The notes beneath the pieces were generated by a model, which saw only the letters and a list, made by a program, of their open reading frames with translations, had not been told where the DNA came from and did no database searches. This document shows positions 32,711-37,255 of a stretch of DNA of 64,000 bases, one piece after another. A program made the translations under genes and the position numbers. The DNA lies in sequence record PV340856.1; one strand, 5' to 3'. The stretch's first letter is position 1; every line of letters starts with the position of its first letter.

Positions 32711-32971
32711 ATGACGTACACAATTAAACCACTGGGTCCTCAGACGGATCTAGACCCTGCTACTGATGTAGATAGTGCTACAACTGTGCATCTTGTAAAT
32801 ACACATTCGGCAGCAGTAGTAATTGTAAGATCTACTTCTGCGAACGTTGGAATTAGTAGTTTTACTCTGCCTGCTGGAGAAATGGTTAAGGTAGAGAAGG
32901 ATGCATCGGACAAATTGTCAGCATCTTCTAACGGAGGCGACGTAAAAGTCACAAAAGTTGCCGCTGGATAA
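32711..32971 (+). CDS. Small late hypothetical / structural protein
   Basis: ATAAATA upstream; beta-rich. Confidence 0.65.
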   Translation: MTYTIKPLGPQTDLDPATDVDSATTVHLVNTHSAAVVIVRSTSANVGISSFTLPAGEMVKVEKDASDKLSASSNGGDVKVTKVAAG

Positions 32972-33010
32972 TTGAGTAATTATAATTAGTAATAGAGTTC
33001 TCCGAGGTTT

Positions 33011-33514
33011 ATGGAGAAGATCAACACTTTCGTTTTGAACATCACTGTGACAATACTTGACTTCCTTTATAGAGGTCGAGACTATCAACGTTTTTGGGTG
33101 CTTGAGGAAATTGCCCGAGCACCCTATTTTGCTTTTTTGAGTGTCTTACATTTCAGAGAAAGCATGGGACTTCGCGGTCCTGAGCATCTATATTTGATGA
33201 AACAACACTTTGAGCAGTCGGTTAATGAAACAGAACATCTGGAGTACATGGAATCTAGGGGCGGTAATTCTTATTGGATTGATCGCTTTGTTGCCAAACA
33301 CCTCGTACTTATCTACTATTGGAGTAATGTGGTTTATTATGGGTTGGCTCCTCGCCTTGCTTACCATCTCTCCTACGAGGTAGAGATACATGCAGCAGAA
33401 ACTTATGCTAAGTATCTTGCTATCAATGGACATGATGACAAGATCCTTGAGATTTTGAATGATGAATTAGAACACTCTAGAGAATTAAAATTAGCAATGG
33501 AGAAAATTAAATGA
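33011..33514 (+). CDS. ptox: Plastoquinol terminal oxidase
   Basis: RFWVLEEIARAPYF, NETEHL, EVEIHA..TY, DELEH di-iron carboxylate motifs. Confidence 0.95.
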   Translation: MEKINTFVLNITVTILDFLYRGRDYQRFWVLEEIARAPYFAFLSVLHFRESMGLRGPEHLYLMKQHFEQSVNETEHLEYMESRGGNSYWIDRFVAKHLVLIYYWSNVVYYGLAPRLAYHLSYEVEIHAAETYAKYLAINGHDDKILEILNDELEHSRELKLAMEKIK

Positions 33515-34530
33515 AAGTAGGAATGATCGGACTTGGACGGATGGGCGAAGGTATGTCCCGCCGTCTCATTAAATCAGGACATGAAGTTTGGGGATACAGA
33601 AACAATGCTGCTAAGGCAGAAGAGCAGTATGAGAAAGGTTACATCAGTGGATACACCACTTCAATCAAATACCTCGTACAAGAAGTCGGGGCAAAAGGTC
33701 CTGGCGTTTATATGATGGTAGTGCCAGCAGAAACAGTGGAGGACACCCTCAATGAGTTACTACAATTTTGTGTGGAAGGCGATATTATTATTGATCATGG
33801 CAATTCCAATTTTAAAGACTCTAGACGCAGGGCAGAACGGTTGGAAAAACTTGGCATCCAATATCTTGACTGTGGTACTAGTGGTGGTGTTTATGGTCTG
33901 GAGCGTGGATATTGTCTTATGGTTGGTGGTGCAAATACTGCAGTATCCGTCTGTTCTCCTATCTTCAGAGCCCTCGCCCCAGGCATTGGATCTGCCTCTC
34001 GTACAGACCCCCTCAGTCATGAAACAAGTGCCGAACATGGTTGGTTACATTGTGGATCAGCTGGAGCAGGTCATTTTGTGAAGATGGTCCATAATGGTGT
34101 GGAGTATGGTATTATGCAGGCATACGCTGAAGGTTTCAATATTCTTCATGAAGCAAATGCTGGATCCAAGTATGTTAAGGAAGGAGATGCTGAGGTTGCC
34201 CCAATGGAAAACCCTGCCGATTATCAGTATGATATTGACTGTGCTGAAGTGGCTGAGCTTTGGCGTCGTGGTAGCGTTGTTGGTTCTTGGTTACTTGACC
34301 TTACTGCGAATGTACTACGCCGCGATGGTGAGCTTCGTAAGTTTGATGGGGGCGTCTCAGATTCTGGCGAAGGTCGTTGGACTGTCCATGCTGCTGTGGA
34401 CCTTGGCGTACCCGCTCCTGTCATCAGCAGTGCGTTGTGGGCACGTTTTGAGTCGCGCCGTCTTGGTGCTTTCACAGCCAAGGTTTTAAATGGTATGCGT
34501 GCTATGTTTGGTGGTCATGATGTTCGGTGA
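33511..34530 (+). CDS. gnd: 6-phosphogluconate dehydrogenase
   Basis: IGLGRMG, DHGNS, DCGTSGG, GHFVKMVHNGVEY, SGEGRW, MRAMFGGH. Confidence 0.97.
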   Translation: MKVGMIGLGRMGEGMSRRLIKSGHEVWGYRNNAAKAEEQYEKGYISGYTTSIKYLVQEVGAKGPGVYMMVVPAETVEDTLNELLQFCVEGDIIIDHGNSNFKDSRRRAERLEKLGIQYLDCGTSGGVYGLERGYCLMVGGANTAVSVCSPIFRALAPGIGSASRTDPLSHETSAEHGWLHCGSAGAGHFVKMVHNGVEYGIMQAYAEGFNILHEANAGSKYVKEGDAEVAPMENPADYQYDIDCAEVAELWRRGSVVGSWLLDLTANVLRRDGELRKFDGGVSDSGEGRWTVHAAVDLGVPAPVISSALWARFESRRLGAFTAKVLNGMRAMFGGHDVR

Positions 34531-34648
34531 ATTTCTTAAATGGATATCGATGCCCTTTGTATTATCCACAATATATTTCGGGATACGAAAAGGTGAAAAT
34601 AACTACTACGACTCAGACGACTATGATGGAAATGGAACCGCTCACTAG
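34520..34648 (+). CDS. ndhP: NdhP-like small subunit of NDH-1L (42 aa, absent from ORF track)
   Basis: MFGEFLKWISMPFVLSTIYFGIRKGENNYYDSDDYDGNGTAH*; C-terminus matches the recalled NdhP motif FFGxxNGxYDxDxYxGNGSAH; GGTGG 5 nt upstream. Confidence 0.85.
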   Translation: MFGEFLKWISMPFVLSTIYFGIRKGENNYYDSDDYDGNGTAH

Positions 34649-35963
34649 AGGCATAGTTATCTTCGGTGCGACTGGAGATCTATGTAAACGAAAACTTATT
34701 CCAGCACTTCATAAACTTTGGGAGAAAGATCTTCTTCCAAAGGGATTTTTAATTACTGGTGCCGCAAGAAGGGATATTGGGGTGGAAGCATGGAAAGAAT
34801 CTCTTGGAGAATATCCAGAGGAATTCCTACATCAATTAGATTATGTTCCTTGTGATTTATCTAATCAGGAAACTCTTCATCATCTTCCTGAAACAGACGA
34901 CACAACATATTTTCTATCTGTTCCGCCAGAAAGATATGAGTCAGCTATTGTTAATCTTAAACAAGGAGGACTTTTAGATGACCCAGAAACATCCCGTGTG
35001 GTTATTGAAAAACCCTTTGGGTACGATCTTAAATCTGCTAATCATTTACAGTCAGTGGTGGGCAGGCATTTACGCGAGAAACAAGTATATCGCATTGATC
35101 ATTATCTCGGTAAAGATACTGTTAATAACATCCTTGCCACCCGTTTTGGCAATATTCTACTGGAACCACTTTGGAACAGGGAGTACATAGAAGAGGTTCA
35201 GATCTATGCAACTGAAACTATTGGTTGTGAAGGTCGTTCACAATACTATGAAGGTGCAGGTGTCGTAAGAGACATGCTGCAAAATCATATGCTTCAGGTT
35301 CTTGCATTGATTGCGATGGAAGCACCATGTCGTATGGATGCAAAAGAAATTCGTAGAGAAAAGGTGAAAGTTTTATCTGCCACACGATTGGGAGAAAAAC
35401 TTATCACTGGTCAGTATGCAAGTTATCGTGATGAAGAAGGTGTTGGTCCTGAATCAATGACTCAAACTTTTGTTGCTGGTGATCTTTATATTGATAACTG
35501 GAGATGGAAAGGTGTTCCATTTCACTTTATGACTGGTAAGAAAATGCCTTATCAGTGTGTAGAAGTTGTGATTAAACTTAAAGCACCGCCACTCAGTTTG
35601 TTTGAGGGTGAGACAAATGATCGTATTGTAATGCGTTTACAACCACATGCTCATCTTGATATTCGCATTGATGTTAAGTCTCCTGGACTTGGTGATTCTG
35701 TTGAACCAGCTACTTTGACTCACCGTTATCCTGACTGGTTGGGTGTGGATGGTTATGAGAAACTTCTTCATGATGCTATCAATGACGATCAATCGCACTT
35801 TGTTCACTCTGAAGAAGTGTTGGAATCCTGGAGAATCGTTGACGATCTAATCTGCACTGGAGATAATTGTAAAGTTAGAACCGCACCTTACATCTATCAT
35901 GATGGGCAGTGGGGTCCTACTCATAAAACACAATTTATTACTGATTGGGATTATCCAGAATGA
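34623..35963 (+). CDS. zwf: Glucose-6-phosphate dehydrogenase
   Basis: GATGDL, EKPFG, RIDHYLGK, DMLQNH; likely start 34623-34632 rather than 34527. Confidence 0.97.
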   Translation: MMEMEPLTRGIVIFGATGDLCKRKLIPALHKLWEKDLLPKGFLITGAARRDIGVEAWKESLGEYPEEFLHQLDYVPCDLSNQETLHHLPETDDTTYFLSVPPERYESAIVNLKQGGLLDDPETSRVVIEKPFGYDLKSANHLQSVVGRHLREKQVYRIDHYLGKDTVNNILATRFGNILLEPLWNREYIEEVQIYATETIGCEGRSQYYEGAGVVRDMLQNHMLQVLALIAMEAPCRMDAKEIRREKVKVLSATRLGEKLITGQYASYRDEEGVGPESMTQTFVAGDLYIDNWRWKGVPFHFMTGKKMPYQCVEVVIKLKAPPLSLFEGETNDRIVMRLQPHAHLDIRIDVKSPGLGDSVEPATLTHRYPDWLGVDGYEKLLHDAINDDQSHFVHSEEVLESWRIVDDLICTGDNCKVRTAPYIYHDGQWGPTHKTQFITDWDYPE

Positions 35964-36040
35964 TTATTGCCAAAGCAACTTTTATTTTCGGAATCATTAT
36001 ATTCTTAATATGTTGGGGGCTTTCTGATGCCTATCGTTAG
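35960..36040 (+). CDS. ndhQ: NdhQ-like minimal single-helix protein (26 aa, absent from ORF track)
   Basis: ATG overlaps zwf stop (ATGA), in frame with TAG 36038-36040; C-terminus FGIIIFLICWGLSDAYR aligns ungapped with recalled NdhQ LGFIAGLIWWALHTAYA. Confidence 0.62.
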   Translation: MIIAKATFIFGIIIFLICWGLSDAYR

Positions 36041-36173
36041 ATCAATAATGCAAAATCCATGGGCACTGGGATTTATGTCCTGGTGCCTTATATGTGTACC
36101 CATCATAGGAATACAGTTAATTCATAAATATGGGTGGCAACATTGGGAACCATTTAATAGGAGCCATAAATGA
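36027..36173 (+). CDS. Small single-TM protein (48 aa, absent from track)
   Basis: MPIVRSIMQNPWALGFMSWCLICVPIIGIQLIHKYGWQHWEPFNRSHK*. Confidence 0.6.
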   Translation: MPIVRSIMQNPWALGFMSWCLICVPIIGIQLIHKYGWQHWEPFNRSHK

Positions 36174-36379
36174 ATCCCGTAATTTTAGTTGGGTGTTTTA
36201 CGCCTCTTATTATCATCTTCATTGTGATGAAACTTGCTGTTTGGGTTGAAGCCGTTAATGCAGAACAGGATTATGTCAGACAAGAACCTCTACGAAAACG
36301 AGGACCCTTTGTGGCAAACCCGTATGAGGATGTTGACTCAGAGGAAGAGGAGTATGGAAATCGCACAGACTATAGATGA
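36170..36379 (+). CDS. Small TM protein with acidic tail
   Basis: ATGA overlap; GCFTPLIIIFIVMKLAVW..EEEEYGNRTDYR. Confidence 0.7.
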   Translation: MNPVILVGCFTPLIIIFIVMKLAVWVEAVNAEQDYVRQEPLRKRGPFVANPYEDVDSEEEEYGNRTDYR

Positions 36380-37203: not shown

Positions 37204-37227
37204 TTTATCATATTCACTAAGTTTTTG

Positions 37228-37255
37228 GAGACCTCTGAACGGGGTCTCTTTTTTT
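37228..37255 (+). terminator. Intrinsic terminator
   Basis: GAGACC..GGTCTC followed by T7. Confidence 0.75.

What the first reader, a model, noticed from the sequence alone, without database searches (positions are those of the whole stretch)
35960..36040. 26-aa minimal NdhQ-like peptide right after zwf
Seen: the ATG overlapping the zwf stop is in frame with TAG at 36038. The C-terminal part reads FGIIIFLICWGLSDAYR. Codons 8-9 lie in a T-run that I could not read with certainty and should be machine-translated. Recalled T. elongatus NdhQ: MATDFNRGIMKFDGADSPAMIAISAVLILGFIAGLIWWALHTAYA. The phage peptide aligns without gaps to its last 26 residues (G, I, LI, W, L and AY conserved) and lacks the N-terminal arm. 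Inference: a stripped-down, possibly deregulated or dominant NdhQ.
Basis: partly seen in the sequence, partly recalled or inferred. Interest (0 to 1): 0.72.

Follow-up and report, generated by a model that had tools for sequence, protein, structure and literature searches.

The report
Phage copy of NDH-1 subunit NdhQ
A 26-residue membrane peptide encoded right after the phage's zwf gene is a real, shortened homologue of NdhQ, a small subunit that holds the cyanobacterial NDH-1L electron-transport complex together, and it belongs to a widespread, almost never annotated family of cyanophage genes.

Summary
The window is Synechococcus phage Sf-FS3.

**Homology.** A profile of 65 canonical NdhQ proteins ranks this peptide and its phage relatives above all 8,955 six-frame ORFs tested (24.1 bits, E 1e-5; next unrelated hit 11.9 bits). 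None of 20,000 shuffles reaches the real score. A profile of the phage peptides hits only NdhQ in the whole PDB. The profile-profile comparison gives 96.5% probability.

**Family.** At least 115 viral loci (68 variants) carry the same gene. It sits beside zwf, gnd, talC, PTOX or petE and is under purifying selection.

**Host.** Marine Synechococcus has its own 39-45 aa NdhQ, orthologous by synteny, that already lacks most of the canonical N-terminal arm. The phage form is therefore about 10-13 residues shorter than the host form, not 19.

**Neighbour.** An unannotated NdhP homologue lies just upstream of zwf. NdhP is the partner subunit on the other side of NdhD1.

**Most likely function (inferred).** Phage NdhP and NdhQ keep host NDH-1L assembled, so that NADPH made by the pentose phosphate pathway feeds proton-pumping electron flow. 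The "deregulated or dominant" idea is untested.

No cyanophage NdhQ turned up in the literature I could search.

The parts
35960..36040 (+). ndhQ-like ORF, 26 aa: one transmembrane helix ending in W-G-L-S-D-A-Y-R. Not annotated in GenBank PV340856.1.
   Evidence: Translation. Canonical NdhQ HMM 24.1 bits, E 1e-5, top window hit. No shuffle reaches the score. The annotation table has no CDS here.
34490..34648 (+). ndhP-like ORF. It is 52 aa from the first ATG; the real start is probably the internal Met pair near 34517, giving about 43 aa. The C-terminus ends in GNGTAH. Not annotated.
   Evidence: phmmer against PDB: NdhP chain 6khi_P, E 1.1e-4. The same ORF type occurs in 134 of 210 viral loci.
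34626..35963 (+). zwf (glucose-6-phosphate dehydrogenase). Its stop overlaps the ndhQ-like start codon.
   Evidence: Annotation of PV340856.1 and ORF list.
33511..34530 (+). gnd (6-phosphogluconate dehydrogenase).
33011..33514 (+). PTOX (plastoquinol terminal oxidase).
36027..36173 (+). gp123-like small membrane protein (phrog_1184, HKYGWxHWEPF motif). Its start lies 14 nt inside the ndhQ-like ORF. Unannotated here.
   Evidence: PHROG hit E 1.8e-26. It is the commonest downstream neighbour of the ndhQ-like gene in other phages.
36170..36379 (+). phrog_2832 small membrane protein, the next gene in the overlapping chain (ATGA junction).

Best explanation
The ORF is a phage-borne auxiliary metabolic gene encoding a shortened NdhQ. 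NdhQ is the single-helix subunit that, together with NdhP, clamps the NdhD1/NdhF1 module onto the core of the NDH-1L complex. The ORF is translated by coupling to zwf through the ATGA overlap. The peptide inserts into the thylakoid membrane and occupies the NdhQ site on host NdhD1. Together with the phage NdhP encoded just upstream of zwf, it keeps NDH-1L assembled while host gene expression is shut down. NADPH made by phage Zwf and Gnd can then be passed through ferredoxin and NDH-1L into the plastoquinone pool, with phage PTOX as an outlet. This pumps protons for the ATP that phage replication needs. Shown here: homology to NdhQ, membership of a widespread selected phage gene family, the genomic association with zwf, gnd, talC, PTOX, petE and ndhP, and the existence of a host orthologue. 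Inferred: translation, binding to NdhD1, a stabilising rather than inhibitory effect, and the pathway logic.
For: Homology. The canonical NdhQ HMM places only this peptide family at the top of 8,955 ORFs: 17.6-29.2 bits against 11.9 for the best other hit, in a gap-free 25-residue alignment. No shuffle out of 20,000 reaches the score. The phage-peptide profile against 177,635 PDB sequences hits only NdhQ, at E 0.028 and 0.094. hhalign of phage family against canonical NdhQ gives probability 96.5%, E 7e-10. As a control, the other small hydrophobic peptide found after zwf in other phages scores 1.5%. Bridge to the host. The NdhQ profile finds picocyanobacterial forms ending in WGL(T/S)HAYP. Marine Synechococcus 5.1 has MENGGSDSTMHVL...WGLANAYP. 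That gene sits between thiE and ribF, as does the Ca. S. spongiarum gene that keeps the full NRGIMRFDGAD arm. A real gene family. There are 115 viral loci and 68 variants. pN/pS is 0.31 in frame against 0.76 and 2.42 out of frame, measured on 18 codons outside the search motif. Context. The neighbours are zwf, gnd, talC, PTOX and petE. NdhP-like ORFs occur in 65 of the 115 ndhQ-like loci and in the window itself. Function of NdhP and NdhQ. They sandwich NdhD1, and deleting them disassembles NDH-1L (PMC6992706, PMC7021789, PMC11794437).
Against: The window's copy is the most divergent member. It has D where all 70 distinct aligned family sequences have N or H, and its R after A-Y replaces the usual P. 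It scores only 14.7 bits (E 0.036) against a narrow marine-Synechococcus NdhQ profile. No close relative of this variant exists in IMG/VR. Against the 1.84-billion-protein library, 24-29 bits would not be significant on its own; the case rests on restricted databases, reciprocity and the transitive chain. There is no expression or binding evidence. The canonical N-terminal arm is invariant in most cyanobacteria and is absent here, so binding could be weaker or different. Pairwise dN/dS over all variants is saturated and only weakly below the out-of-frame controls.
Confidence: 0.6

Rival explanations
1. Dominant-negative or re-tuning mimic. The armless peptide displaces host NdhQ from NdhD1 without providing the arm's contacts. 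This loosens or alters NDH-1L, for example by shifting complexes toward NDH-1M or changing the balance between cyclic flow and respiration. It is the reader's 'deregulated or dominant' idea.
For: The N-terminal arm residues R-G-I-M-K-F and A-D are invariant in 60 canonical NdhQ and absent from all 68 phage variants. Even the host's residual GGSDS stub is missing.
Against: The host lineage itself has lost most of the arm while keeping the gene in conserved synteny, so the arm is dispensable in this clade. The phages usually also carry NdhP with its conserved C-terminal motif intact, which fits support rather than sabotage. The neighbouring genes all promote electron flow and NADPH supply.
Confidence: 0.15
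2. A true NdhQ descendant that has been exapted. The helix now works elsewhere in the membrane, for example with the adjacent gp123-like or phrog_2832 membrane proteins, PTOX or another complex, and no longer binds NDH-1L.
For: The gene is very often followed by the gp123-like membrane protein (26 of 86 distinct contexts). Phage copies are about equally distant, roughly 45% identity in the core, from every host clade. This suggests long independent evolution.
Against: The residues shared by all NdhQ (mid-helix G-x-I and the W-[AG]-L-x-x-A-Y end) are exactly those kept invariant in the phage family. That is expected if the same binding surface is under selection.
Confidence: 0.12
3. In this particular phage the ORF is a decaying remnant or is not translated, even though the family is real elsewhere.
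For: It is the shortest (26 aa, shared with one other variant) and most divergent member, with unique D and R substitutions in the terminal motif. It has no close relative and is unannotated.
Against: The ORF is intact. It has ATGA coupling to zwf and a 14-nt overlap with the next gene. It keeps G, I, W, G, L, A and Y at the conserved positions. Its canonical-HMM score is in the middle of the family range.
Confidence: 0.08
4. It is a homologue of another small photosynthetic subunit with a VWG-type C-terminus, such as PetN of cytochrome b6f, or merely a generic hydrophobic peptide resembling NdhQ by composition.
For: The length (26-30 aa) and a VWG motif recall PetN (from memory). One family member sits directly after plastocyanin.
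Against: The PDB holds b6f, PSI and PSII small subunits, yet the phage profile hit only NdhQ at E<=10. Composition-matched shuffles reach at most 17.2 bits against 23.8 for the real peptide. The other small phage peptide family from the same position shows no similarity.
Confidence: 0.02

Closest known systems
NdhQ of cyanobacterial NDH-1L (T. elongatus, PDB 6NBY/6KHI/6L7O chain Q; Synechocystis NdhQ)
   Same: Single transmembrane helix with a mid-helix G-x-I and a terminal W-[AG]-L-x-x-A-Y. Gap-free alignment to the last 25-26 residues; 12 of 26 identical to T. elongatus.
   Different: Lacks the whole 18-19 residue N-terminal arm (NRGIMKFxGAD). It is 26 aa instead of 45-47, is encoded by a virus, and has G instead of A after the Trp.
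Marine Synechococcus / Cyanobium NdhQ orthologues (hypothetical proteins such as WP_255442541.1 of PROS-7-1; 38-45 aa)
   Same: The same WGLxxAYP-type ending and GGIG mid-helix. This is the host lineage of the phage.
   Different: The host form keeps an N-terminal MENGGS(D/E)S stub and sits between thiE and ribF on the chromosome. Phage forms start at or just before the helix. Core identity is only about 36-56%.
Cyanophage-encoded NdhP (reported for P-TIM68 and S-SCSM2R; PMC12801897)
   Same: Also a roughly 40-aa single-helix, NDH-1L-specific subunit carried by T4-like cyanophages in the zwf/gnd region. It is present in this window at 34490-34648.
   Different: A different protein family that binds the opposite face of NdhD1. 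The phage NdhP is full length, whereas the phage NdhQ is truncated.
Other phage copies of small photosynthetic membrane proteins (hli, psaJ/F, psaK)
   Same: Host-derived small membrane subunits carried as auxiliary metabolic genes to sustain host energy conversion during infection.
   Different: Those are annotated and recognisable by standard models. No Pfam or NCBIfam model exists for NdhQ, so this one has gone unnoticed.

Membership tests
NdhQ (NDH-1L small subunit) | Significant sequence-profile similarity to bona fide NdhQ, reciprocally | tested here: met
   Forward HMM 24.1 bits, E 1e-5 among 8,955 ORFs. Reciprocal PDB search returns only NdhQ. hhalign 96.5%. 0 of 20,000 shuffles reach the score.
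NdhQ (NDH-1L small subunit) | One transmembrane helix with conserved mid-helix G-x-I and C-terminal W-[AG]-L-x-x-A-Y | tested here: met
   Residues G11, I13, W19, G20, L21, A24 and Y25 align to the invariant or near-invariant NdhQ columns. GRAVY is 1.57.
NdhQ (NDH-1L small subunit) | Conserved N-terminal arm N-R-G-I-M-K-F-x-G-A-D (invariant in 60 canonical sequences) | tested here: not met
   Absent. Met1 aligns to profile position 19. The arm is also largely absent from the syntenic marine Synechococcus orthologues, so it does not define the family in the host clade.
NdhQ (NDH-1L small subunit) | Physical presence in NDH-1L next to NdhD1/NdhF1 and a stabilising effect on the complex | not testable with these tools
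   No multimer modelling or experiment is available. The role is known only for Synechocystis and T. elongatus NdhQ.
Cyanophage auxiliary metabolic gene | Host homologue exists; the gene recurs in phage genomes; it is under purifying selection; it sits among other metabolic genes | tested here: met
   Host orthologue. 115 viral loci. pN/pS 0.31 in frame. Neighbours are zwf, gnd, talC, PTOX, petE and ndhP.
PetN (cytochrome b6f small subunit) | Profile similarity to PetN chains of solved b6f complexes | tested here: not met
   No PetN chain appears among PDB hits at E<=10, with either the single peptide or the family profile.

The most novel reading that the evidence does not exclude
T4-like cyanophages carry a matched pair of NDH-1L clamps: a full-length NdhP and an armless NdhQ. 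The pair is embedded with zwf, gnd, talC and PTOX as one viral 'chlororespiration' module. The armless NdhQ is a virus-specific design that locks host NdhD1/NdhF1 onto the core independently of whatever the N-terminal arm normally senses. NADPH from the pentose phosphate pathway is thereby committed to proton-pumping electron flow during infection.
Probability: 0.3. Interest if true: 0.8.

Novelty: new member of a known kind. Interest (0 to 1): 0.64.

Why it matters
Cyanophage genes for NDH-1 subunits were thought to be rare: ndhP 'only in P-TIM68' according to PMC12801897, plus ndhI and ndhD.

- An NdhQ homologue is present in at least 115 viral contigs.
- NdhP-like ORFs occur in about two thirds of the zwf-region loci examined. 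Neither gene is annotated in the four isolate records where I checked that gene (Sf-FS3, DSL-LC02, S-CAM4 for ndhQ; Sf-FS3, Syn1 for ndhP).
- NDH-1L therefore appears to be a routine target of viral metabolic takeover. This links the well-known PPP genes to a concrete electron sink.
- Marine Synechococcus does have NdhQ, which a recent evolutionary survey listed as missing (PMC12038448). That changes the picture of NDH-1 subunit evolution in the most abundant marine phototrophs.
- The natural armless variants give a ready-made experiment on what the NdhQ N-terminal arm does.

Tried and rejected
- **Single-sequence searches found nothing.** The 26-aa peptide gave no hit in PDB, Pfam or NCBIfam, and only itself by tblastn against phages. 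tblastn with a 29-aa relative found nothing, probably because of the low-complexity filter. Only profiles worked.
- **No curated model exists.** Pfam and NCBIfam have no NdhQ model even for T. elongatus-type NdhQ, so their silence says nothing.
- **PetN idea.** I raised it from memory and rejected it.
- **The TWPGRYRG peptide.** I tested whether the other small peptide found after zwf in related phages is a diverged NdhQ. There is no support. It does give the best non-family scores, about 15 bits, against the marine NdhQ profile.
- **All-pairs dN/dS.** Saturated and uninformative outside the motif, so I replaced it with 24 independent close pairs.
- **Promoter scan.** No more sites than shuffles give.
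- **Close relatives of the window's variant.** A search for CWGLSDAY in IMG/VR found none.
- **Host genome scan.** The genome-contig scan used a pattern too narrow for marine subcluster 5.1. Those hosts were recovered later through the protein database.
- **Structure prediction.** Not attempted: the peptide is below the 30-aa limit and no multimer mode is offered.
- **The NdhQ arm in the literature.** The original NdhP/NdhQ paper is not held. I found nothing on what the NdhQ N-terminal arm contacts.

Full report
**What the window is**

A 5-kb query around the finding matches Synechococcus phage Sf-FS3 (PV340856.1) at 100% identity. This is a 216-kb T4-like cyanomyovirus isolated on WH8102 from a sponge. 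Window position plus 124,000 gives the record position. The local gene order is:

- PTOX (33011-33514)
- gnd (33511-34530)
- zwf (annotated 34626-35963)
- a string of small overlapping ORFs

The GenBank record annotates nothing between the zwf stop and 36170.

**The observation**

Window 35960-36037 translates to MIIAKATFIFGIIIFLICWGLSDAYR, followed by TAG. The ATG overlaps the zwf stop as ATGA. The next ORF starts 14 nt before this one ends, at 36027; it is a gp123-like protein of phrog_1184. The T-run codons read F-I.

An ORF of this size is not remarkable in itself, so everything depends on homology.

**Is it NdhQ-like?**

Single-sequence searches were blind. Neither Pfam nor NCBIfam has any NdhQ model, not even for canonical NdhQ. 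I therefore collected 65 NdhQ homologues and built an HMM. I searched it against every six-frame ORF of at least 20 aa in the window and in 88 fetched phage loci, 8,955 ORFs in total.

| Hit | Bits | E-value |
|---|---|---|
| Related peptides from other phage contigs | 17.6-29.2 | 2.5e-7 to 1.1e-3 |
| This window's peptide | 24.1 | 1e-5 |
| Best unrelated ORF | 11.9 | 0.067 |

The only hits above noise were this peptide and the related phage peptides. The alignment is gap-free: profile positions 19-43 against peptide residues 1-25.

Four further tests agree:

- None of 20,000 composition-preserving shuffles reaches the real score. The maximum is 17.2 bits against 23.8, and the reversed sequence scores 0.1.
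- A profile of five phage peptides, searched against all 177,635 distinct PDB sequences, returned two hits at E<=10. Both are NdhQ.
- Profile against profile (28 phage peptides versus 60 NdhQ) gives hhalign probability 96.5%, E 7e-10, over 25 columns.
- As a control, the other small hydrophobic peptide at the same position after zwf in related phages (consensus ending TWPGRYRG) gives 1.5% and no meaningful PDB hit.

**A widespread phage family**

Downstream of zwf in 80 IMG/VR loci I found the same peptide type in L009 and L079-L082. In L087/L088 it lies directly after plastocyanin. In isolate DSL-LC02 it lies downstream of psbA-psbD.

Over 90 of them scored at E ≤ 10 with the canonical NdhQ HMM (70 listed), and a motif check placed about 105 in the family. 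In all I hold 115 viral loci with 68 distinct peptides of 26-36 aa as called from the furthest in-range Met (26-35 after trimming to the nearest).

W, G, A and Y of the terminal motif are essentially invariant, and mid-helix G-x-I is strongly conserved. None has the NRGIMKF arm.

The immediate neighbours are zwf, gnd, talC, PTOX, petE, the gp123-like protein and a protein ending in ELFEEPSTYEDE. This is the classic cyanomyovirus metabolic-gene island.

Isolates carrying it include S-CAM4, ACG-2014j and ACG-2014e. In S-CAM4 and DSL-LC02, as in Sf-FS3, the ORF is not annotated.

**Selection**

All-pairs estimates are saturated. I then used 24 independent close pairs and only the 18 codons outside the motif used for the search.

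| Reading frame | pN/pS |
|---|---|
| Proposed coding frame | 0.31 |
| Alternative frame +1 | 0.76 |
| Alternative frame +2 | 2.42 |

This points to purifying selection in the proposed frame.

**The host has NdhQ too**

A profile search of 1.84 billion representative proteins with canonical NdhQ found distant members ending in WGL(T/S)HAYP. These belong to Cyanobium and subcluster 5.2 Synechococcus. Ca. Synechococcus spongiarum keeps the full arm together with WGL(A/T)NAYP.

A second search found marine subcluster 5.1 proteins in PROS-7-1, CS-197 and Parasynechococcus. They are 39-45 aa, of the form MENGGSDSTMHVL...WGLANAYP.

In PROS-7-1 the gene lies between thiE and ribF, followed by DUF3611, surE and pheS. 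The arrangement is the same in S. spongiarum and in Synechococcus CBW1107. Sequence bridging plus synteny make these NdhQ orthologues.

A recent survey left the NdhQ cell blank for WH8102 and Prochlorococcus CCMP1375 (PMC12038448, supplementary table). The host form has already lost the NRGIMKF half of the arm. Relative to its own host lineage, the phage peptide is about 10-13 residues shorter.

Phage cores are about 45% identical to every host clade. There is no sign of a recent transfer.

**NdhP next door**

The ORF at 34490-34648 lies between gnd and zwf and ends in ...YYDSDDYDGNGTAH. It hits PDB NdhP chains at E 1.1e-4. It too is unannotated.

The same ORF type is in 134 of the 210 viral loci I hold, and in 65 of the 115 loci with the NdhQ-like gene. 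In the solved NDH-1L structures, NdhP and NdhQ sit on opposite faces of NdhD1 and contact NdhF1, lipids and two beta-carotenes. Deleting either one disassembles about half of NDH-1L, and deleting both disassembles nearly all of it (PMC6992706, PMC7021789, PMC11794437).

Two independent NDH-1L-specific clamps flanking zwf are strong contextual support for the assignment.

**Mechanism (inferred)**

The chain of overlapping starts runs zwf-ATGA-ndhQ, then a 14-nt overlap into the gp123-like gene, then ATGA into phrog_2832. This suggests co-translation with zwf.

The most economical reading is that the phage supplies both small clamps so that NDH-1L stays assembled during infection. NADPH made by phage Zwf and Gnd would then flow through ferredoxin into plastoquinone, with proton pumping, and PTOX would serve as an overflow. 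This extends the established view that cyanophages redirect carbon to the pentose phosphate pathway; that view comes from my own knowledge of the field, not from a tool result.

My confidence at each level:

| Claim | Confidence |
|---|---|
| The ORF is homologous to NdhQ | about 0.85-0.9 |
| It is expressed | about 0.8 |
| It stabilises NDH-1L | about 0.5-0.55 |

**Caveats**

- The window's copy is the family's outlier, with D for N/H and R for P in the terminal motif.
- It scores only 14.7 bits against the narrow marine-host profile.
- It has no close relative in IMG/VR.
- The similarity would not be significant in a search of all proteins. It rests on reciprocity, restricted search spaces, profile-profile scoring and the transitive chain through the host orthologues.
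- What the canonical N-terminal arm does is not described in the literature I could reach. The consequence of its absence is therefore open, and the dominant-negative reading cannot be excluded.

**Novelty**

The held literature has one paper containing both 'cyanophage' and 'NdhQ', and there the term appears only in a cited title. Phage ndhP, ndhI and ndhD are known, and ndhP is described as uncommon. This is a new member of a known kind, the phage-borne photosynthetic electron-transport subunit. It comes in a naturally truncated form and is far more common than annotation suggests.

Noticed in passing
window 34490-34648 (+): Unannotated NdhP homologue between gnd and zwf (PDB NdhP, E 1.1e-4). 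It overlaps the end of gnd and the annotated start of zwf. NdhP-like ORFs occur in 134 of 210 viral loci examined, so phage ndhP is much commoner than the literature states.
   Followed up: partly
L003:621-701, L004:621-707, L005:621-698, L013-L017, L031, L034, L039, L073, L076, L079 (just after zwf): A second family of 26-30 aa hydrophobic peptides (consensus M-S-x-L-F-V-F-x-F-I-x-L-L...L-T-W-P-G-R-Y-R-G) occupies the same post-zwf slot in S-PRM1, Syn30, Sf-CH3 and many contigs. In L079, L081 and L082 it sits in tandem with the NdhQ-like gene. It has no PDB or NdhQ relationship, and its function is unknown.
   Followed up: partly
L291:4001-4129 (Synechococcus PROS-7-1, CP047945.1); L293, L294: Marine and sponge-associated Synechococcus encode NdhQ orthologues between thiE and ribF. 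A 2025 survey lists NdhQ as absent from WH8102 and Prochlorococcus. Some Ca. S. spongiarum copies are mis-named 'RNA polymerase subunit sigma' in GenBank.
   Followed up: yes
window 36027-36173 and 36170-36379 (+): Two conserved small membrane proteins (phrog_1184 with an HKYGWxHWEPF motif, and phrog_2832 with an acidic tail ending in EEEEYGxRTDYR) follow the NdhQ-like gene in an overlapping chain. The first is unannotated in this record. Their function is unknown, and they are frequent neighbours of the NdhQ-like gene.
   Followed up: no
window 34527 versus 34626: The longest zwf ORF starts at a GTG at 34527 (478 aa). GenBank starts it at 34626 (445 aa). The shorter start leaves room for the NdhP-like ORF and is probably right.
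   Followed up: no
L087:1069-1161 (+): Another 30-aa hydrophobic ORF (ending ...LGYGIYKNFKNR) lies directly upstream of plastocyanin in the contig where the NdhQ-like gene lies directly downstream.
   Followed up: no
window 37227-37249 (+): A strong terminator-like hairpin (9-bp stem, T-run) lies after the run of small ORFs. A promoter-like site lies at 32958-32986, just upstream of PTOX. Together they may bound one transcription unit, but the promoter scan overall is at chance level.
   Followed up: no
P0066: A 1,591-aa protein tops the NdhQ profile search with 18 separate matches to the helix part of the profile. It is presumably a repetitive hydrophobic protein and not an NdhQ relative.
   Followed up: no
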